NCBI RefSeq assembly: GCF_001194135.2
Contig: NC_068981.1
Location: 124,701,772-124,765,771, forward strand
DNA: 64,000 bases
Reading direction: 5' to 3'
DNA from: Octopus bimaculoides
Taxonomy: Eukaryota
The translations under genes and the position numbers were made by a program. Position 1 is the first letter of the stretch. The number at the start of each line of letters is the position of its first letter. The notes below the pieces were generated by a model. It was not told the origin of the DNA. It searched no databases and saw only the letters and a list, made by a program, of their open reading frames with translations. Shown piece by piece: positions 1,922 to 62,247 of this stretch.

Positions 1922-1986
1922 CAAAGCAAAAGTAATGTTTTTATTTTCAGTCGGGTTATCCAACACTTTCTGCAAATTAGCAGCAA
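1922..1986 (-). CDS. OXSR1: OSR1/SPAK-like kinase CCT exon: (V)[21 protein letters not shown]
   Basis: Acceptor ctctatttccag, donor gtaaga, 65 nt, phase 1 to 0. Matches VAANLQKIV...TFKL of OSR1/SPAK. Confidence 0.96.
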
Positions 1987-2867: not shown

Positions 2868-3245
2868 GGAGGCGTAATGGCCCAGTGGTTAGGGCAGCGG
2901 ACTCGCGGTCATAGCATCACGGTTTTGATTCCCAGACCGGGCGTTGTGAGTGTTTATTGAGCGAAAACACCTAAAGCTCCACGAGGTTCCGGCAGGGGAT
3001 GGTGGTGAACCCTGCTGTACTCTTCCACAACTTTCTCTCACTCTTACTTCCTGTTTCTGTTGTGCCTGTAATTCAAAGGGTCAGCCTTGTCACACTGTGT
3101 CAAGCTGAATATCCCCGAGAACTACGTTAAGGGTACACGTGTCTGTGGAGTGCTCAGCCACTTGCACATTAATTTCACGAGCAGGCTGTTCCGTTGATCG
3201 GATCAACTGGAACCCTCGACATCGTAAGTGACAGAATGCCAACAA
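2868..3245 (+). mobile_element. tRNA-derived SINE, family A (full length)
   Basis: Head with A/B-box-like tggcccagtggttagg / ggttttgattcccag. Body with gagaactacgttaagggtacac...cacttgcac.ttaatttcacgagcagg. The same element recurs at 36015-36401. Confidence 0.85.
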
Positions 3246-3426: not shown

Positions 3427-5587
3427 GCTAATAGCTTAGGAGTGAAATTTAGGATTTCTTGGGTTTCCTCCTGAATTGATTTTGATAAAACCTTTCCCAC
3501 TGGTTTGTACCCTATGACAACAGCATTGTTATGTTTTCATTATTCTGTGCAATGTCCTTTCTTTTTTATTTCAGATTCTTCAGTTTTAGGGTGAACCATG
3601 CTAATAGCTCTTGAATGAAAATAGCCCATTGAGACATTTTTTGTCCGAAAATGAAGGCTAATGATACATATTAAGCATACATTGAGTATAGATTTAACAG
3701 AAAACTATAATGATATTATAACATTTATTGACATAATGAATTATTTAACCACATGAGCACCATTTCAATGGATAACTTCAAAAACCCCTATTAGTCATGG
3801 AATCTGTCAATTTCTTAATAGTAGCAGATTGGACTGCCTCTGCCGCAGCTTTGATGGTAAATTGGTGTCCATCAGCATAAACATCTTGTTTAATGATGGA
3901 CCGAAGATTTTCGATAGGGTTGAGATCCAGAGATGCTAGCAACCACATTATCAACCTTTCACCTTGTATACTCTAAGATCTTAGGAATGTTTGGGTGATC
4001 CTAGCAGAGTGGGAGGGAGTATTGTCAAGTATGAATACAAATTCCTTAGAAGTGACAGCAGTGCCATCTAGCCAGGGATCCTAGAACTCCTTCAGGAGAT
4101 TGCAGTAGGCAGCTGCAATTACTTTAACTCCTTCAGGCACCCTCACTAGGCCAACAAGTCTGTCCCCAATGATACTAGTCCACAACACGACTCCTTCACC
4201 CTGGTGTTGACGTCGTAAACGTTGGTGAAACTCAACTCTAAAATAGACTCAACCATTTTCCAAACCGTCAGGTTCATCAAGGGTTGCCCTGGCTTCCTCA
4301 GTGAACAGAACACAACTCATGTCTAACGTCATACTTTTGGGCCCATGGAAGCCTCAAACTCAAGTGAAGAGGCAGTTTCAGGGATTCTCACAAGGAAGTC
4401 ATGGTCCCAAGGATACAATTTCTGGTTTTTGGTACATGAGGAATTCTGGAGGCGGTGAAAATAGCTTTGCTCGTTTGTCCAGGTTTCCTATGTAACTTGT
4501 GGCCAATATTCTTTAAATCCTTAGCTGTCACAGCTAAATCATTCATTATGTCAATAAATGTTATATTATTATTGTGGTCTTCTGTTAAATATAAACTCAA
4601 CGTATGCTTAATATGTATCATTACCCTTCATTTTCTGAAAAAAAAAAAAAAAAAATGTCTAGCTAGGCTATTTTTATTCAAAAGCTATCAGCATGGTTCA
4701 CCCAAAAACTGAAGAATCTGAAATAAAAAAGGATATTACGCAGAACAACAAAAACTAACTGGACCTGTGAAAAATTCATGGAAAACATAAAAGACGTAAG
4801 CATCTGTAAACAGTGTACTGGTGTCATGAGAAATGTTTGCATATCATGACCGTCTGTCTTTATGTTCTGAGTTCAAATTCTGCCGAGATCAACTTTGTCC
4901 TTTCAGGGTTGATAAATTAAGTATCAGCTGTATACTGGGGTCGATCTAATCAACTGGCTCCCTCCCCACAAAAAATTCAGGCCTAGAAAAGTATATTGTG
5001 ACAGTTACAGAATATAGAAAATAATGTAACACCAATGACTATATAATCCAACCAAAATATCTCAGTTACACAAACGTAGACGGAATTACTATTTAACCTT
5101 AAAATACATCGTACATATTCAAATAAGCTTAATGTACAAATTGAAATGTAAAAGAACGAAATAATAAATGGATTTATGAATGAAAGTTTGGTAATTGCGT
5201 TTATTTCCACCACACGACACTTATTATTGCAAACATGTTTTAACTGACCTAAACTATACACACACACACAAATACATTCATATATCGAGTTGTAGCTGTA
5301 ATTCAAAGGGGCCAGCCTTGTCATATTCTGTGTGAGGCTGAATCTCCCTGAGAGCTATGTTAATGTTATGCATGCTTGTGGACTACTCAGCCATTTGTGA
5401 GTTAATTTTATCGTGAGGTAATAAAAAGTGAAATTGACATCCAATATTTGCTGTGTGTAGGTATCTATGTATGAACTTTTCTTTGGATTTATGTATCTAC
5501 TGTCTCTCTCACTTTCTCTTTCACTTCCTCTGTGTCCTTCTTCTCAGAAAACCAAGAAATCCTAAATTTCACTCCTAAGCTATTAGC
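3427..5587 (-). mobile_element. Decayed Tc1-like DNA transposon (TRT/DD37E-like) with long IR-DR-type inverted repeats
   Basis: Minus-strand fragments at about 3750-4500: VLFTEEARATLDEPDG, RRQHQGEGVVLWTSIIGDRLVG..VPEGVK, FILDNTPSHSA, DLNPIENL. Inverted repeats at 3427-3468/5545-5587 and 3560-3645/4648-4733. Confidence 0.8.
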
Positions 5588-5972
5588 TTCCATCTTTCTC
5601 GTTATTCAAATACCCAATAAACACTGTGAAAGTGAACATGGTTTGCTGGTAAACTATCAGGTGTATACAATATGATTTATTCATTGTGTTCATTACTTTT
5701 TGCATCTGTTATTTATCATTGATCATTTATAAAAATGAAACTGTATCCTTTAATTTGCTGCTTTTCTCTACACAAACTGAGAAGATATCTTGTGGAACGG
5801 TTATTATTTTAATGGGATATATCTTGTAATCACCTGAGGAGACACATCTACACTGTCAGACACTGCTAATTCAGTTGTTAAATATCCCACCTGTGAGGGA
5901 TTGATGCTAGATGGGTCAAAGCATTGCAGTGATTAATAAACATTCTCATGTCTTCCATATCTCTCATTATTC

Positions 5973-5989
<17 letters not shown>

Positions 5990-6004
<15 letters not shown>

Positions 6005-6823
6005 CAAAATGGGACAAGAACGCAATACATCCAGACAGTTAGGTGATACAAAAAAGGAGACAACAAAACATCCAGATAGATGAAACAAAGAAAACAAGGA
6101 TGGGTCATTTGGAGTTTTCTTTCCTCAGTCAAGTTCCAGATTATCTTTGCAATTTTGGCTGGTTATACTCGAGATTGCTCCATCTGGCCAGCTCCAAGGA
6201 AAAACTAAGCAAAGAGCATTAGATTCCTTGGAAGAAAGCAGCAAATGTATACGAAAACAAGGACAGAAAAAAAAACGGAGAATGTTACACAAATACAAAT
6301 AACAGGACATAACAACAGGTGTCTTTTGACTAAGGACAAATTAAATAAAGCTGGCATGTGTGGAAATAAAGCTTTACGGCAGGGATATAAGATTTCACAG
6401 GCACAGGGAGGGATATAGATGTTGCACAGACGACGGCCGAACCAAGAAAGAAAGATCAGGCTTCGCCGAACACCAGTCATATGGGGAGAGAAGAGAAAGA
6501 GGTAGAGGCAGAAGGACAGAAGAATTAAGGAGAGGCGAGAAAAAATGACAGGGACACAGTGAAGTGAAAAGAGGAGGGAAAGCGAGCAAGAAGAGAAGGC
6601 AAGGAAATATGAGAGAGTGGGAACGAAAGGTATATATATATATATATAAATTGTAAATGCAAAAAATAAAAACAAAAACACAAAGGATTCTGCGGTACAC
6701 GTGTTTCAAGCTTTATATCAGTGTATAATTGACAATACAAAGCTATCTTCAGCCGCAAAAGTATTTCTCTCCCAAGAAATTATATCACATCGGCGTTAAA
6801 GGAGGAAGAAGTGTTAAGAAGTG

Positions 6824-6825
<2 letters not shown>
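5990..6825 (-). mobile_element. Non-coding Penelope-like-derived element carrying a hammerhead
   Basis: A discrete block of higher GC between two (TA)n tracts, containing the 6688-6760 hammerhead and no convincing ORF. Confidence 0.55.
6688..6760 (-). ncRNA. Type-I hammerhead ribozyme fold (PLE-type, palindromic stem III)
   Basis: Minus strand reads ttttgcgg CTGAAGA t AGCTTTGTATT-14 nt-GATATAAAGCT t GAAA CACGTG TA ccgcagaa. This gives an 8-bp stem I, an intact core, an 11-bp stem II and a GUA cleavage triplet. Confidence 0.85.
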
Positions 6826-6866
<41 letters not shown>

Positions 6867-8029
6867 CATACAGTAGCCATTTATATATCATAATTAACGT
6901 ATATACAGTCTTGATAGGTCAGTTAGTGTAGTATTTGTCCTGAGATAACATCACTTATGGACACGCTGTATTGAAAACAATAAATGTTGTTATACATCAA
7001 GTATCACACATAGGTGGCTATATTAATTTAATGCTTTCTCAGTTCCATATACTGGATTTATATACAGAGTGGTAGACCACACATTTATTAAACATGTATT
7101 TCAACTTGCAGTAAAACTAAGACTCCATAGTTTAAATGACAAGGTTTGGACAACATGATGTGGTGGTTGGAGAGTAGGTAGCATTACTCTAGGTACCTTC
7201 ACTCCCACTAAACAGTTAATAAGCTAACATAAAGATCACCCAGATGTAATTAAATGTACTTGTTCCTACAAGACTTAGACAAATATTTTTATACAAATAT
7301 TTAAATTAGTAACAATGAAAAGAAAAAAAGAAAATCTACCCTTGGTGGCTTAAAGCAAAATAATATGTGAAAAAGTGCATTAAATATATTTTCCTTTCTT
7401 TCTTCTGATTTGTTTACACATATGTCCCACTTAATGCAATTATTGATGTTAGAAATCAATAACAGAATTAGCATAATTAATGAATTCAATTTGCATTTAA
7501 ACATAAACTATCAACAATGAATGCTATAAATAAACAAGAATAAGATTATAGTGGTTTAGAAACGAAAATGCTGAATGTTGTAAAGTGAGTCTAATCTGTG
7601 AAATGCCAACTCAATTTTTTTTTTTTTTTTTTTTTAAATTTAATAAAAGAAAAAAACCCTGAAAACATTGAATGTTCCTGTTTGAATAAATTACATTTAA
7701 CCCAGGTGGACTATTTCAGTTTTATTTTTGTAATTTTCACATGTCTTATATATTCTAATGGAATTCCAGACAGACTCCATTTGGTTCTTATGCACTTTCA
7801 GAAGAGTCAGACCTTGGCCCTTGTAAAACTCATAAACGCTGCCCATCTTCCTTCATAATAAACTATAAAAAAAATTAAAACATCATCATTTAATGACCAT
7901 TGTCCATCCTGGCATGGGTTGGACAGTTTGACCAGAGTTGGCAAGCTACACCAGACTCCAGTCTGATTTGGTATGGTTTCTACAGCTGGATGCCCTTCCT
8001 AATACCAACCACTTTACAGAGTTAGCTGG

Positions 8030-8190
8030 GTGCTTTTATGTGGGACCACACAGGCACTTTTATGTGACACCGCACAGGCACTTTTACACGGTACTGCATG
8101 GGCACTTTTACAAGGCACCGCACAGGCACTTTTATGTGGCACTGCATGGGCACTTTTACATGATGTCACACGAGTGTTTTTTACATGGCA
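8030..8190 (+). repeat. 24-bp minisatellite (GGCACTTTTAYRHGGCACYGCAYR) inside a family B repeat
   Basis: ggcac starts at 8053, 8077, 8101, 8125 and 8149, an exact 24-bp period. Confidence 0.9.
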
Positions 8191-8929: not shown

Positions 8930-8998
8930 CAACAATTAAATCACGACCATCAACAAGACCAGCTTCAACTAGTTCTCTGGAGACACTATCTGATGTAT
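8930..8998 (-). CDS. OXSR1: OSR1/SPAK-like kinase CCT exon: (D)TSDSVSRELVEAGLVDGRDLIV
   Basis: Acceptor ttattcttttag, donor gtaagc, 69 nt, phase 1 to 1. Matches DTAEGVSQELISAGLVDGRDLVI. Confidence 0.97.
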
Positions 8999-30525: not shown

Positions 30526-30620
30526 TGTATAGAATATTTTGCTTATATCATCACCAATTGTTTGAAGTGTAGTTTTGTTTTGTTTTGTTTACTTAAGTTA
30601 CTTTGTACCTATGTTCTCAC

Positions 30621-31334
30621 CTGCGATGAAGTTTCCCCGGCTGGTAATCCAGAGTGGGGTAACTGTTTAACTGCAGAGGAAGGAGTGCTTTGACTGGTTG
30701 CATTAGCCGCAACACTGTCATCTGAGGAGATGCCAGTGGTAGCAGCGCCAGTAGTATGAGACGTAGCAGTAACAGTAGTATTAGTAGTAGTCAGAGCGCC
30801 AGCATTTTTATCTAGATTTTGGTTGCCTGCTGCCATATCAGTCACAGTTGTCAGCAAAGAAGAGTGCTCATTGGGGAGTTGACCTGTAGAAGGGATAGCT
30901 GATGAAGCTTGGGGCAATGATGATGTCGCTGGTGACGGCGATACAGCTGCTTCCTGATCCTTTGAATTTTCAGGTGCGCTATTAGTTGACATCGGTGATT
31001 CCGTTGATGGCATTGGTGTTGTTGATGCAGCTGAAGAAGCAGCACTTAGCTGTTTACTGGTTGTGGCAGTGTCAGCCTGTGGCGGCACAGTACCTGAAGA
31101 TGGTGCAGGAACTTTAGCATCTTCCATCAATGGTTGCGGAGACTGCTGTGACCGGGGCATGGTCTGTGGGGTGTCAGAACTGGTAGTTTCGCTTGGACTA
31201 GTGTTATTGGGCACCTGAGTGTCATTGGTGTTAGATGTCACTGCAGGGGAAGCTGATGAAGAAGCAGATGTTGTTGTGGTTCGTGCAGGATCAGAGGCCT
31301 CTGACGTTGAGGGCTGCGATGCATCCCCTTCTTT
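30621..31334 (-). CDS. OXSR1: Large symmetric exon encoding a 238-aa Ser/Thr/Pro/Ala-rich linker (KEGDASQPST...GETSSQ)
   Basis: The only long, stop-free, GC-elevated, non-repeat ORF in the window. Acceptor ttataatacag, donor gtgaga, 714 nt, phase 0 to 0, compatible with both neighbouring exons. Assigned to the kinase by position and phase, not by homology. Confidence 0.85.
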
Positions 31335-31499
31335 CTGTATTATAATGTAAGAGGACTTATGACACACACACAAAAAAAAATTCCTTTGCTATACAACATT
31401 AACAACAAAACATTTCTTAACAATTTTTAAAAATTATCTGTTAGCAATGACAAAATAAAATCTATGATATGGGATGAATTTTTGTGTTCCCCTTCAAGA

Positions 31500-36014: not shown

Positions 36015-36401
36015 GTTGTTGTTGCTGGCACTCCGTCGCTTACGACATTGAGGGTTCCAGCTGATCCGATCAACGGAACAGCCTGCTCGTGAAATTGACG
36101 TGCAAGTGGCTGAGCACTCCACAGACACATGTACCCTTAACGTAGTTCTCGGGGATATTCAGCCTGACAGTGTGACGAGGTTGACCCTTTAAATTACAGG
36201 CACAACAGAAACAGGAAGAAAGAGTGAGTGAAAGTTGTGGCGAAAGAGTACAGAAGGGTTCGCCACCATACCTTGCTGGAGCCTTGTGGAACTTTAGGTG
36301 TTTTCGCTCAATAAACACACACAACGCCCGGTCTGGGAATCAAAACCACGATCCTATGACCGCGAGTCCGCTGCCCTAACCACTAGGCCATTGCGCCTCC
36401 A
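36015..36401 (-). mobile_element. tRNA-derived SINE, family A (full length)
   Basis: High-identity reverse complement of 2868-3245. Confidence 0.88.
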
Positions 36402-36510: not shown

Positions 36511-37305
36511 CAGAGTGCAGTGAATATATTGTCATCTAAATGACGCAAAAATGAAAATATCACTGACAACAGATATGTTTACCAAAATTACATAAAAATA
36601 TCTTGAAATACTAAAGAGTAAATTCATTCAATAAAATTGCCATTGGCATCAACCACAGTTTGCAGATGACTTCAAAATCTCCAGCAGCACTTCTGGATGA
36701 TTTCCTTGTTTAAGTTGGTGAATGTTGCCATAATCCTTGCCTTCAGTTCATCTTTGGGAGCTTTGTTGGTCTCTCACTCAACTGTGCCCCACAGATAATA
36801 ATCAAGGGGGTTTCAGTCTGGAGAGTTAGGTGGCCAGATGGTAGGGGTGATGTGATTATGGAAATTGTTTGACAGCCATGACAGGGCTCTCCTGCTTGTG
36901 TGGCATGGTGCAGAGTTCCAGCAACCACCCTCTTGACCCAGGGCAGCACTACCTCCTCCAGGCACTTGATGTAGGCCTCCGTACTGAGTCTGAGGTCGTG
37001 AAAGAAGATGAATAAAGGCATAACGTCGCCATCACTAGTGATCACTCCAAACACCATGATGTTGACTGGATGTTTGATTCTGATCACTCTCAGTACATGT
37101 ACTCAGATTGACATTCAAACACTCTGAAATGCTCATAATGGAGCTTCCAGCATGAATGCCAAGCAGTACAGCATGTCGTTTCCAAAATTCCTGGCAGAGA
37201 GAATTGCGTTGTGGTACTATTTTTCTCAGACGGTGCCCAACTGACACTACTATACTGCAGGAAATTAAAATTATACAATGGCTACAATTTACCCATTGCA
37301 CCCTG
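36511..37305 (-). mobile_element. Internally deleted maT/DD37D-like (Bmmar1-type) element
   Basis: KHPVNIMVFGVITSDGDVM, WPPNSPD*NPLDYYLWG, VVDANGNFIE*. TA-flanked TIRs cagagtgcagtgaatatattgt / acaatttacccattgcaccctg. Confidence 0.8.
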
Positions 37306-39389: not shown

Positions 39390-40654
39390 GCAAGGGTTGG
39401 ACAAAATAATGGAAACACCTTAAAATTTCAAACAAATTTATTTTAAGATGGGGTAGGACTGCCTTTGGCAGTAATTACAGCTTGAATTCTATGAGGTATG
39501 AACTCGTACAAAGTTTGAATTGTTTGCAATGGAATCTTTGTCCATTCTTCAGTTAAAACAGTCTCCAGTTCTTGTAGTGATAATGGTAGAGGATATCGAC
39601 TCCTTACTAGTTTTTCTAAAATGCACCATAAATGTTCAATAATATTGAGATCTGGGGACAGTGGTGGCCAAATAAGATGTTCAACTTCACTAGAATGTTC
39701 CTCGTGCCATTCAGTAACAACTTTAGCTGTGTGAATTGGTGCATTATCATCATGAAAGATTCTGTGTTTCCCTTCGGAAACAGTTCCACAACCACAGGGT
39801 GAATTTGATTAGATAAAATGCTTAAATAGTCTTGACTATTAATTCTGCCATGAAGGGAAACCATTGGGCCAGTAGATTTCCAAGATATAGCCCCCAACAG
39901 ATCATCACAGATCCTCCTCCATGTTTAACATTTGGAAGAAGGCAGTTTGGGTCAAATGCTTCTTTTGGCTGTCTCCACATGCATACTCAGCCAGTGGTTG
40001 GAAATGAGGTAAAGGATGACAAGTCCGAGAAAATAATAATCTTCCACTGTTCTAGGGACCAATTCTGTAGGTCTTTACTCCACTCTAAATGCTTTGCAAT
40101 GTTTGTTTTTGAAAGCAGTGGTTTTCTGATTGCAGCCCTCCCATGAAATCCAGCTTTGTGCAGCTCCTGGTGAACAGTTTTTGTGAAAACTGGGTTCTCG
40201 AGAATGTCATTAAGCTCTGCAGTAATTTTGGGAGCTGTACTTTTGTGATCCTTTCTAACTATTCGCATAAGAGTCCTACAGTCCCTATCTGAAAGTTTTG
40301 GCTTTCTTCCAGAGTTTTATTTCGACAAGGAAGTTTCTCCCCGTTTCCCAAAGGCTGTCATTACTTTCAAGACAGTACTTCTTGATACACCAAACACATC
40401 GGCTGTTTTTGTTATGCTAGCGCCTGCCATACAAGCACCAATAATCTGACCTCTTTCAAAGTCAATAGATCTGTTATTTTAATGAATTTTAATTACCTTT
40501 TTTGATGATATATGAAAAGAAACGGCAATTTTAGTGAAACATATTAAACAACACTAATAATAAATCAAAAGGCATAAAAATAACCAAGCTTTTGATTATT
40601 TTATAGATATTTCAAAATTATGATGCTAGGTGTTTCCATTATTTTGTTCAACCC

Positions 40655-61358: not shown

Positions 61359-62247
61359 AGAGGTCTGATCAATAAATACCTGGACTGTTGCCATAGAAAT
61401 GAATTTAATGCACACAGAGTGAAGCTGCTTGGCAAAGATTGGCCTTGAACTCTACTGTGCATGTGCACTAAGTTTTAACATTCTAGCTCACTTCCGCTGT
61501 TTACAGCAGTGCTTGGAAGGAAGGTGTGGAGGAAATGATTGTTGCAATGACCATGACAGAGAAAGTTGTCATGGCGATACCTGCTCAGAGGCCTATGCAA
61601 AGTTGCAGAAAGTGTATGGAGAGGAGTGTATGAGCCACAAACAAGTGTACGAGTGGTTGAGACATTTTCAAGATGGCCGAAAATATGCCGATATTGACAA
61701 ACGTTCTGGGAGACCCACAACCAACAGAACTGAGAAAAATACAGCTCAGAGGAAATCATCGAATCACCATCCAAGAATTATCAGAGGATGTGTAGATTAA
61801 TTATGGTTCAGTTCAGAGCATTATGACTGAAGATTTACGCATGAGATGTGTGTCTGCCAAATCTGCGTCAAAACTGTTTTCGGCTGACCAAAAAGACACA
61901 CGGGCTTCAGTTGCACAAGATCTTGATTGATTGTGTTGAGAACAATGAAAACTTTTTTAAAACTTTGCTATGCGTAAAACTTTGCTACGAGTAAGTATTA
62001 CCAAGCTTTTGGCAAAATCTGATGCAGATTCTCTGCTCAACTTCCTCTATCATGGTTAATGTGTCAATCACACACTACACACCTTTCTTTCAAGCATTGC
62101 TGTAAACAGCAGAAGTGATCTAGAACATTAAAACTTAGTGTGCATGCACAGCAGAGTTCAAGGTCAATCTGTATCAAGCAGCTTCACTCTGTGTGCTTTA
62201 GCTTCGTTAATATAGTAACAGCTCAGATACTTATTAATCAGACCACA
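61359..62247 (+). mobile_element. Non-autonomous mariner derivative with about 170-bp inverted repeats
   Basis: TA at both ends; arms at 61359-61528 and 62078-62247. The interior encodes only an N-terminal transposase: EAYAKLQKVYGEECMSHKQVYEWLRHFQDGR...KRSGRPTT. Confidence 0.88.

What the first reader, a model, noticed from the sequence alone, without database searches (positions are those of the whole stretch)
6688..6760. Intact hammerhead in sense orientation inside an intron of the OSR1/SPAK pre-mRNA
Seen: an 8-bp stem I (uuuugcgg/ccgcagaa), an intact CUGAAGA and GAAA core, and an 11-bp stem II. It lies on the gene's strand in the 6.9-kb intron between the two CCT exons at 8930-8998 and 1922-1986. 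The predicted cut is between 6696 and 6695. Inference: cleavage before splicing would separate the kinase from the end of its RFxV-binding CCT domain. The palindromic stem III probably needs a second molecule, so activity may be low or depend on transcript concentration, which could give a self-limiting switch.
Basis: partly seen in the sequence, partly recalled or inferred. Interest (0 to 1): 0.7.

Follow-up and report, generated by a model that had tools for sequence, protein, structure and literature searches.

The report
Repeat-borne hammerhead motif in kinase intron
The hammerhead ribozyme motif is really there, in sense orientation inside an intron of an OSR1/SPAK-type kinase gene, but it is one truncated copy of a repeat present hundreds to thousands of times in this genome, and nothing suggests it regulates the kinase.

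Summary
The motif at 6688-6760 (minus strand) is real. It has an 8-bp stem I, the CUGAAGA and GAAA core boxes, a 10-12-bp stem II and a GUA|C cut site at 6696|6695. It lies in the 6,943-nt intron that splits the OSR1_C (CCT) domain. No shuffle of the window (0 of 600) gave comparable stems.

Three details change the picture:
- The base of stem II is a U·U mismatch.
- No Rfam hammerhead model detects the motif.
- It sits in a ~165-bp unit flanked by (TA)n on both sides. This unit is a 5'-truncated copy of a repeat with about 400-800 full-motif copies, and it is also present in two other species.

Its architecture matches the dimer-dependent type-I hammerheads of Penelope-like elements and animal retrozymes: a long helix II, a mismatch at its base, and a 2-bp palindromic helix III.

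Family RNA reads cross the cut site with flat depth and no pile-up of ends. The monomer forms stem III with about 5% probability. The predicted dimer Kd is 30-70 nM. In wider intron context stem I is predicted to be lost. Slow intronic ribozymes are known not to impair splicing.

Verdict: an ordinary transposon-derived hammerhead copy. The proposed self-limiting switch is not supported, but it has not been tested directly at this locus.

The parts
6688..6760 (-). Type-I hammerhead motif: stem I 6753-6760/6688-6695; core CUGAAGA 6746-6752; U·U mismatch 6745/6708; stem II 6733-6744/6709-6720 with loop 6721-6732; GAAA 6704-6707; palindrome ACACGUGU 6697-6704 (stem III); H17 = A6696; cut site 6696|6695
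   Evidence: Sequence and dissection; fold; 0 of 600 shuffles with comparable stems
6648..6813 (-). This copy of the repeat unit carrying the hammerhead. It is 5'-truncated at about 6810-6813; other copies continue upstream with a shared sequence. Its 3' end lies at about 6648, next to (TA)n
   Evidence: Depth profile and loose ends. At 6810, 40-170 reads per run continue with AGATGAGATATAAGAGG... or AGGTGTGATATAAGAGG...
6826..6860 (.). (TA)n tract flanking the unit on its 5' side (gene strand). It is preceded by a 20-nt AACACTTCTT x2 stretch (6806-6825) whose outer part, 6814-6825, is not shared with the family
   Evidence: Sequence; family depth falls to 0 at 6814-6825
6630..6650 (.). (TA)n tract flanking the unit on its 3' side. 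Other copies also abut TA- or TG-rich microsatellite sequence here
   Evidence: Sequence; loose ends before 6662
8930..8998 (-). OSR1/SPAK CCT-domain exon upstream of the intron (DTSDSVSRELVEAGLVDGRDLIV)
   Evidence: Expressed at about 50x with the flanking intron at 0, and spliced to the exon at about 13.65 kb
1922..1986 (-). OSR1/SPAK CCT-domain exon downstream of the intron ((V)[21 protein letters not shown]), 4,709 nt from the cut site

Best explanation
The motif is the hammerhead carried by a high-copy interspersed repeat. It is of the dimer-dependent type-I class found in the terminal repeats of Penelope-like retroelements (PLEs) and in their non-autonomous derivatives, the animal non-LTR retrozymes. 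The copy at 6648-6813 is a 5'-truncated, roughly 165-bp 3'-terminal fragment that inserted into a (TA)n microsatellite in an intron of the OSR1/SPAK-type gene, by chance in sense orientation. Shown: the motif; its repeat nature and copy number; the truncation; the (TA)n flanks; presence of the family in other species; and flat RNA coverage over the cut site. Inferred: the parent element is a PLE or retrozyme. In that element's own life cycle the hammerhead acts, if at all, as a dimer between tandem copies or with the element's protein. As a lone intronic monomer it cleaves too slowly and too rarely to change output of the kinase mRNA.
For: Repeat nature. In DNA contigs the word depth is 65-90 thousand over 6718-6810 and about 560 thousand over 6682-6711, against about 50 in the unique flank. 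In raw genomic reads the depth is about 300-540x over the full motif and about 750-1,300x over its 3' half, against about 0.7x in the unique flank. That gives about 400-800 and 1,000-1,800 copies.

Truncation. At 6810 other copies continue into a shared upstream sequence that is missing here.

Other species. Organism B has a transcript contig that matches 6667-6810 with 2 mismatches and carries the same upstream extension. Organism C has more diverged copies.

Architecture. The motif matches published descriptions. [quoted passage not shown] They work as dimers and show low activity in vitro (PMC4209133). Axolotl HHR_Amex2 has a 2-bp helix III with a tetraloop and a U·U mismatch at the base of helix II. 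It cleaved 22% in 1 h as a monomer and far better as a dimer (PMC7229834). PLEs also show (TA)n or AT-rich targets, 5' truncation, tails, and hammerheads near their 3' ends (PMC8557442, PMC11167929).

Activity. Monomer stem III forms with probability about 0.05. The homodimer of lowest free energy is the double hammerhead, and the predicted Kd is 30-70 nM. Predicted stem I probability is <= 0.03 in 341-1,051-nt context. Family RNA depth is flat across 6695/6696 (87.5, 88 and 87.7) and no ends pile up there. The same absence of ends was reported for an Anolis PLE hammerhead, which also needed the element's protein to cleave (PMC11167929).

Host gene. Exon A is expressed and spliced, with its flanking intron at zero depth. 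Slow intronic ribozymes do not impair splicing (PMC2995048, PMC10919898).
Against: No reverse transcriptase or GIY-YIG open reading frame, and no tandem arrangement, could be linked to this family, because the other genomic copies could not be read. The PLE or retrozyme assignment therefore rests on architecture and insertion signature alone. No Rfam hammerhead model recognises the motif. No compensatory (two-sided) base changes were seen in the family; all changes were one-sided. The absence of variants at >= 10% in the 13 core positions is not statistically significant (about 1.6 expected). The RNA libraries look unstranded and are probably not enriched for nascent RNA. Standard libraries do not capture 5'-OH or 2',3'-cyclic-phosphate ends well, so flat coverage does not exclude a small cleaved fraction. 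This intron itself had no reads.
Confidence: 0.8

Rival explanations
1. One reading: the intronic hammerhead is a gene-specific, concentration-dependent switch. It would cleave the OSR1/SPAK pre-mRNA before splicing and so limit production of kinase with a complete CCT domain.
For: The geometry is right. The motif is in sense orientation, inside the intron that splits the CCT domain, with an intact core. An intronic ribozyme that tunes mRNA output is a known mechanism, shown for the CPEB3 HDV-like ribozyme (PMC10919898). The dimer fold is thermodynamically favoured once two copies meet.
Against: The motif is one of hundreds to thousands of repeat copies and is 5'-truncated, so it was not built for this gene. 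The predicted Kd of 30-70 nM is far above pre-mRNA levels: less than 0.01% would be dimeric at 1 pM and 6% at 1 nM. The summed RNA of the whole family is only about as abundant as one exon of this gene. Stem I is lost in wider context. No read ends occur at the cut site in family RNA. The polymerase needs only a few minutes at most to cover the 4,709 nt to the next exon, whereas related hammerheads cleave 6-22% per hour as monomers (PMC7229834). Slow intronic hammerheads leave splicing intact (PMC2995048).
Confidence: 0.04
2. The family is a catalytically dead relic. The hammerhead-like sequence is kept only because the repeat amplified recently, and the U·U mismatch at 10.1/11.1 together with the lack of loop-loop tertiary contacts abolishes cleavage in every context.
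For: U·U is the family consensus, with no variant at 6745 or 6708. No Rfam hammerhead model matches. There is no covariation and no significant core conservation beyond what the family's youth would give. There are no read ends at the cut site. PLE min-hammerheads are barely active in vitro (PMC4209133).
Against: A natural hammerhead with the same U·U mismatch and 2-bp helix III does cleave (PMC7229834). In organism C the only listed change inside the two conserved core boxes is at N7, the one free position; a minority of copies also have G at H17. Indel subfamilies alter the distal part of stem II or its loop (a 21-nt deletion, an insertion of about 16 nt) while the base of the helix is kept. 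The palindrome that allows dimerisation is retained.
Confidence: 0.12
3. The parent element is not a PLE or retrozyme. It is a SINE-like element transcribed by RNA polymerase III that carries a hammerhead, like the Sm-alpha and Sj-alpha elements of schistosomes.
For: The unit is short and high-copy. T-runs (UUUUU, UUUUUU) follow the motif on the sense strand and could act as polymerase III terminators. SINE-like hammerhead carriers are known (PMC6765202).
Against: No tRNA-like or promoter part is visible, since this copy is truncated upstream. There is no A-rich 3' tail. The (TA)n flanks, the 5' truncation and the non-family 'tail' fit PLE insertion signatures (PMC8557442, PMC11167929).
Confidence: 0.08

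Closest known systems
Minimal type-I hammerheads of Penelope-like elements (Cervera & de la Pena 2014, PMC4209133; Frangieh et al. 2024, PMC11167929)
   Same: Type-I topology, a helix II longer than usual, an unpaired or mismatched nucleotide at the base of helix II, a very short palindromic helix III that implies dimer action, very high copy number, AT-rich or (TA)n insertion sites, 5'-truncated copies with a non-templated 'tail', and no RNA-seq ends at the cut site.
   Different: Helix I here has 8 bp, against the 4-5 bp reported for schistosome PLE motifs. Helix II (10-12 bp with a 12-nt loop) is longer than the 6-8 bp reported. No PLE open reading frame or pLTR pair has been linked to this family.
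Animal non-LTR retrozyme hammerheads, especially axolotl HHR_Amex2 and the mussel family (Cervera & de la Pena 2020, PMC7229834; Li et al. 2026 preprint, 10.64898/2026.07.22.740005)
   Same: A 2-bp helix III capped by a tetraloop, a U·U mismatch at the base of helix II, weak monomer activity with stronger dimer activity expected, low G+C content, thousands of copies, and dispersed solo monomers that are often intronic.
   Different: Retrozymes are defined by head-to-tail tandem units of 150-450 bp that are expressed as circular RNAs. Neither tandem units nor circles could be examined here, and this copy is a solo truncated fragment. The conserved loop 1-loop 2 contacts of canonical type-I motifs are not recognisable.
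Conserved intronic ribozymes of vertebrates: HH9 and HH10 hammerheads (de la Pena & Garcia-Robles 2010, cited in PMC6765202) and the CPEB3 HDV-like ribozyme (PMC10919898)
   Same: A self-cleaving motif in sense orientation inside an intron of a protein-coding gene.
   Different: Those are single-copy elements, conserved at orthologous sites across amniotes or mammals, and active as monomers on a time scale of minutes. This motif is a repeat copy, needs a dimer, and has no evidence of orthologous conservation. The Rfam HH9 and HH10 models do not match it.

Membership tests
Hammerhead ribozyme (general consensus) | Core nucleotides C3 U4 G5 A6 N7 G8 A9 and G12 A13 A14, the A15.1-U16.1 pair, and H17 not G | tested here: met
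   CUGAAGA at 6752-6746, GAA at 6707-6705, A6704-U6697, A6696
Hammerhead ribozyme (general consensus) | Three helices around the core in the correct order (type I: open at helix I) | tested here: met
   Helix I has 8 bp and helix II 10-12 bp. Helix III has only 2 bp as a monomer and 8 bp in the dimer. 0 of 600 shuffles gave comparable stems
Hammerhead ribozyme (general consensus) | Watson-Crick pair at 10.1-11.1 (usually G-C) | tested here: not met
   U6745·U6708 mismatch, which is the family consensus. The same deviation is documented in the active axolotl HHR_Amex2 (PMC7229834)
Hammerhead ribozyme (general consensus) | Site-specific self-cleavage that leaves 2',3'-cyclic phosphate and 5'-OH ends | not testable with these tools
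   Only indirect data: no read-end pile-up at 6695/6696 in family RNA, and no coverage of this intron
Rfam hammerhead families (Hammerhead_1, Hammerhead_3, Hammerhead_II, HH9, HH10) | Covariance-model score at or above the family's gathering threshold | tested here: not met
   No hammerhead hit at gathering threshold on the whole window, nor at E <= 10 on 701 nt or on 89 nt
Dimer-dependent type-I hammerheads (newt, PLE and retrozyme class) | Helix III of 1-2 bp with a palindromic loop that allows an extended intermolecular helix III | tested here: met
   ACACGUGU is self-complementary. The homodimer of lowest free energy is the double hammerhead (-46.5 kcal/mol against 2 x -16.8), and stem III forms with probability 0.05 in the monomer
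Penelope-like element | Open reading frame encoding a reverse transcriptase (with or without a GIY-YIG endonuclease) flanked by pLTRs that carry the hammerhead | not tested
   Other genomic copies could not be read. No such reading frame adjoins this truncated copy. Contig-collection scans found nothing usable
Penelope-like element | Insertion signature: AT-rich or microsatellite target, 5' truncation, short non-family tail | tested here: met
   (TA)n on both sides, truncation at about 6810, and a non-family stretch at 6814-6825, compared with PMC8557442 and PMC11167929
Animal non-LTR retrozyme | Head-to-tail tandem units, each with a hammerhead, expressed as small circular RNAs | not tested
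   There is only one unit in the window. The family's upstream part is unknown, so tandem junctions could not be recognised
OSR1/SPAK (STK39/OXSR1) kinase gene (host gene) | C-terminal OSR1_C/CCT domain | tested here: met
   Pfam PF12202, E = 2.2e-17; PDB 2v3s and 7o86; SPAK-like homologues at 70-76% identity
OSR1/SPAK (STK39/OXSR1) kinase gene (host gene) | N-terminal STE20-type kinase domain in the same gene | tested here: inconclusive
   No kinase exon lies in the window; it presumably lies beyond 64,000

The most novel reading that the evidence does not exclude
Because hundreds of copies share the same palindromic stem III and the same stem I, transcripts of the family could pair in trans with sense-oriented intronic copies such as this one. 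Host pre-mRNAs would then be cut in proportion to the total level of family RNA. That would amount to a transcriptome-wide sensor of transposon activity built from double hammerheads.
Probability: 0.03. Interest if true: 0.7.

Novelty: new member of a known kind. Interest (0 to 1): 0.22.

Why it matters
As a regulatory switch of a chloride-transport and osmotic-stress kinase it would have been notable, but the evidence points to an ordinary transposon relic. What remains useful is modest. It documents a cephalopod repeat family of roughly a thousand copies that carries a dimer-type hammerhead with an unusually long helix II, and two literature searches combining hammerhead ribozymes with octopus or retrozymes found no description of such a family. 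It also shows that hammerhead hits in introns of invertebrate genomes should be checked for repeat membership before a gene-specific role is proposed.

Tried and rejected
- Rfam at gathering threshold, and at E <= 10 on 701 nt and on 89 nt, gave no hammerhead model, only noise hits such as microRNA models on the TA tracts.
- Self-BLAST of the unit and its neighbours against the window found no second copy.
- Exact 22-mer scans of the metagenome and viral contig collections gave 0 hits.
- A structural core pattern in metagenome contigs gave 31 hits. All lacked stems, so they are chance matches and served only as a negative control.
- A homologue search with the 95-residue CCT peptide returned hits mostly on short contigs (best identity 76%) and no cephalopod gene locus, so the orthologous intron could not be examined.
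- A run search with the unique intron flank returned only organism A.
- Laying RNA reads on the locus showed zero coverage of the unique intron, so cleavage at this locus is untested.
- The joints between TA tracts (for example 6651 to 6824) were rejected as evidence of an empty-site allele. Their depth far exceeds single-copy depth and they arise from microsatellites elsewhere.
- Lunse et al. 2017 (PMC5785218) is not held in the library.

Full report
OBSERVATION. On the minus strand, 6760-6688 reads UUUUGCGG-CUGAAGA-U-AGCUUUGUAUUG...(loop)...UGAUAUAAAGCU-U-GAAA-CACGUG-U-A|CCGCAGAA. Stem I has 8 bp. The two core boxes are intact (N7 = A). A15.1-U16.1 is present. Stem III has only 2 bp closing an ACGU loop, and ACACGUGU is self-complementary.

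The motif is the only descriptor hit in the window. Twelve of 100 shuffles gave a hit at loose thresholds. None of 600 gave stem I >= 7 bp together with stem II >= 8 bp. In the metagenome contig collection, 31 sites match the linear core pattern and none has the stems. No Rfam hammerhead model reports the motif, at gathering threshold or at E <= 10 on 701 nt or 89 nt. It therefore satisfies hammerhead rules by descriptor and lies outside the curated models.

HOST GENE. Exons at 8930-8998 and 1922-1986 (minus strand) have AG/GT borders and encode DTSDSVSRELVEAGLVDGRDLIV and (V)[21 protein letters not shown]. Joined, they match the CCT domains of OSR1 and SPAK (2v3s, E = 1.3e-12; 7o86). Together with the neighbouring exons (about 15.25 kb, 13.65 kb and 1.07 kb), the 95-residue peptide hits Pfam OSR1_C at 2.2e-17 and SPAK-like proteins at 70-76% identity. 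The intron is 6,943 nt. The cut site lies 2,234 nt from the donor and 4,709 nt from the acceptor. No kinase-domain exon is in the window. In RNA-seq, exon A has about 50x depth in the roughly 6% of each run that was read. Its flanking intron is at 0, and spliced reads join it to the exon encoding LNDIKFDFTPGQ. The exon A-exon B junction reads were not displayed.

THE MOTIF BELONGS TO A REPEAT. Genomic contigs of three runs pile up on 5,000-6,920. The bin holding the motif has a word depth of about 225,000, against 50-90 in the unique flank. At finer scale, 6718-6810 is at 65-90 thousand and 6682-6711 at about 560 thousand. Raw genomic reads give a less inflated estimate. The unique flank 7070-7311 is at about 0.7x per run, 6718-6805 at about 300-540x, and 6674-6717 at about 750-1,300x. 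That is roughly 400-800 copies of the whole motif and 1,000-1,800 of its 3' half at >= 85% similarity. No second copy lies in the window, which is expected at that density.

Family similarity stops at about 6810-6813. There, 40-170 reads per run continue with a shared sequence (AGATGAGATATAAGAGGTGA... or AGGTGTGATATAAGAGGTGA...) that this locus lacks. This copy is therefore truncated at its 5' end in the sense of the hammerhead. At the other end the family runs to about 6648 and abuts TA- or TG-rich microsatellite sequence in other copies too. The unit is thus about 165 bp and sits between (TA)n tracts at 6630-6650 and 6826-6860. A short stretch not shared with the family (6814-6825, part of the AACACTTCTT duplication at 6806-6825) lies at the truncated end. 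This copy differs from the majority letter of the family at about 5-6 of 162 positions.

The neighbouring segment 6003-6629 is a different and older repeat, with many positions that differ from its family majority.

OTHER SPECIES. Transcriptome contigs of organism B include a 211-nt contig that equals 6667-6810 with 2 mismatches and runs on into the same upstream extension. Organism C has several more diverged matches. In organism C the only listed change inside the two conserved core boxes is A-to-G at N7, the one position free to vary. A minority of its copies have G at H17, which would inactivate them.

VARIATION IN THE FAMILY. Among RNA reads at >= 10% share, variants fall at 6691, 6701, 6716, 6731, 6735, 6736, 6738, 6742 and 6760 within the motif. 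None falls in CUGAAGA, GAAA, U16.1, H17 or the U·U positions. With 9 variable positions among 73, zero among the 13 core positions is not significant (about 1.6 expected). Most stem changes are one-sided transitions that keep a pair or a wobble. Those that break a pair lie at helix ends. No two-sided compensatory change was seen. Indel subfamilies remove 21 nt (6718-6738), which would leave a 6-bp stem II hairpin, or lengthen the loop by about 16 nt. Both keep the base of helix II.

ACTIVITY. In the isolated 73-mer, stems I and II form with probability near 1, but stem III forms with probability of only about 0.05. The homodimer of lowest free energy is the double hammerhead, with an 8-bp intermolecular stem III and swapped stem I (-46.5 kcal/mol against 2 x -16.8). 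The ensemble estimate of Kd is about 30-70 nM, so less than 0.01% would be dimeric at 1 pM and 3-6% at 1 nM. In 341-1,051-nt context the predicted stem I probability falls to <= 0.03.

RNA reads of the whole family (>= 90% similarity) cross the cut site with flat depth (87.5, 88 and 87.7 in the three bins around it) and no place where molecules begin or end. Summed family RNA is about as abundant as exon A of the host gene, so partner molecules are scarce. The unique intron flank has no reads in the RNA libraries used, so cleavage at this locus itself is untested.

COMPARISON WITH KNOWN SYSTEMS. [quoted passage not shown] Cervera and de la Pena (PMC7229834) describe the axolotl HHR_Amex2. [quoted passage not shown] It cleaved 22% per hour as a monomer and much better as a dimer. 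The same paper reports about 5,000 type-I hammerheads in a mussel. Craig et al. (PMC8557442) and Frangieh et al. (PMC11167929) report (TA)n or AT-rich targets, 5' truncation, tails and hammerheads near PLE 3' ends. The latter found that the Anolis PLE hammerhead needs the element's protein to cleave and leaves no RNA-seq ends at its cut site. A 2026 preprint (10.64898/2026.07.22.740005) derives animal retrozymes from PLE pLTRs and finds dispersed monomers, about 43% of them intronic in Xenopus.

For the switch idea, the relevant precedents are the HH9 and HH10 hammerheads and the CPEB3 ribozyme. Those are single-copy, conserved at orthologous sites and fast. Work summarised in PMC2995048 and PMC10919898 (Dye 2006; Fong 2009) shows that slow intronic ribozymes leave splicing intact.

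CONCLUSION. The best explanation (confidence about 0.8) is a 5'-truncated solo copy of a repeat of the PLE or retrozyme lineage that carries a dimer-type hammerhead and has a negligible effect on the host gene. The specific link to a PLE is inferred, not shown. The regulatory switch is not supported (about 0.04). Novelty: a new member of a known kind. Interest is low.

Noticed in passing
window 6003-6629: A second repeat with even higher copy number (word depth 134-940 thousand) lies directly beside the hammerhead unit, also bounded by (TA)n tracts (5970-6002 and 6630-6650). This copy differs from its family majority at many positions, so it is older than the hammerhead unit. Its class is unknown.
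   Followed up: partly
window 7877-8150 (also 11.6-11.9 kb and 39.05-39.3 kb): An extremely abundant repeat (word depth up to 6.7 million at 7877-8013). ORF translations at three places in the window share an LQLDALPN / LHLDALPN-like stretch, which suggests copies of one interspersed family. Pfam finds nothing.
   Followed up: partly
window 30609-31373 (-): A 254-residue open reading frame rich in Ser, Thr, Pro and Ala, on the gene's strand and upstream of the CCT exons. It may be a long linker exon of the same kinase gene. It has no Pfam match.
   Followed up: partly
window 39987-40268 (-) and 61429-61800 (+); also 36743-37087 (-) and 39616-39897 (-): Remnants of Tc1/mariner transposases: HTH_Tnp_Tc3_2 (E = 7e-14) and the Mos1 HTH_48 domain (E = 3e-7). 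The other two ORFs look transposase-like by eye but have no Pfam hit.
   Followed up: partly
window 5289-5408, 3059-3175, 36092-36206: Three copies (72-78% identical) of another interspersed repeat within the window.
   Followed up: no
window about 9.5-9.9 kb, 34.4-35.6 kb, 42.8-43.1 kb, 44.5-44.6 kb, 46.8-47.5 kb, 53.1-53.4 kb, 60.9-61.3 kb: Runs of N (assembly gaps), mostly next to TA or CA microsatellites. Parts of the gene's introns are therefore not resolved in this assembly.
   Followed up: no
window 6700 (family variant): About a quarter of family RNA reads carry an extra GT after 6700. This lengthens the stem III region to ACACACGUGU and breaks the perfect palindrome, so it may mark a subfamily with different dimer pairing.
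   Followed up: no
window 6894-6981: A low-copy repeat (about 20-80x in raw genomic reads, against 0.7x for unique sequence) lies between the (TA)n tract and the unique intron sequence.
   Followed up: no
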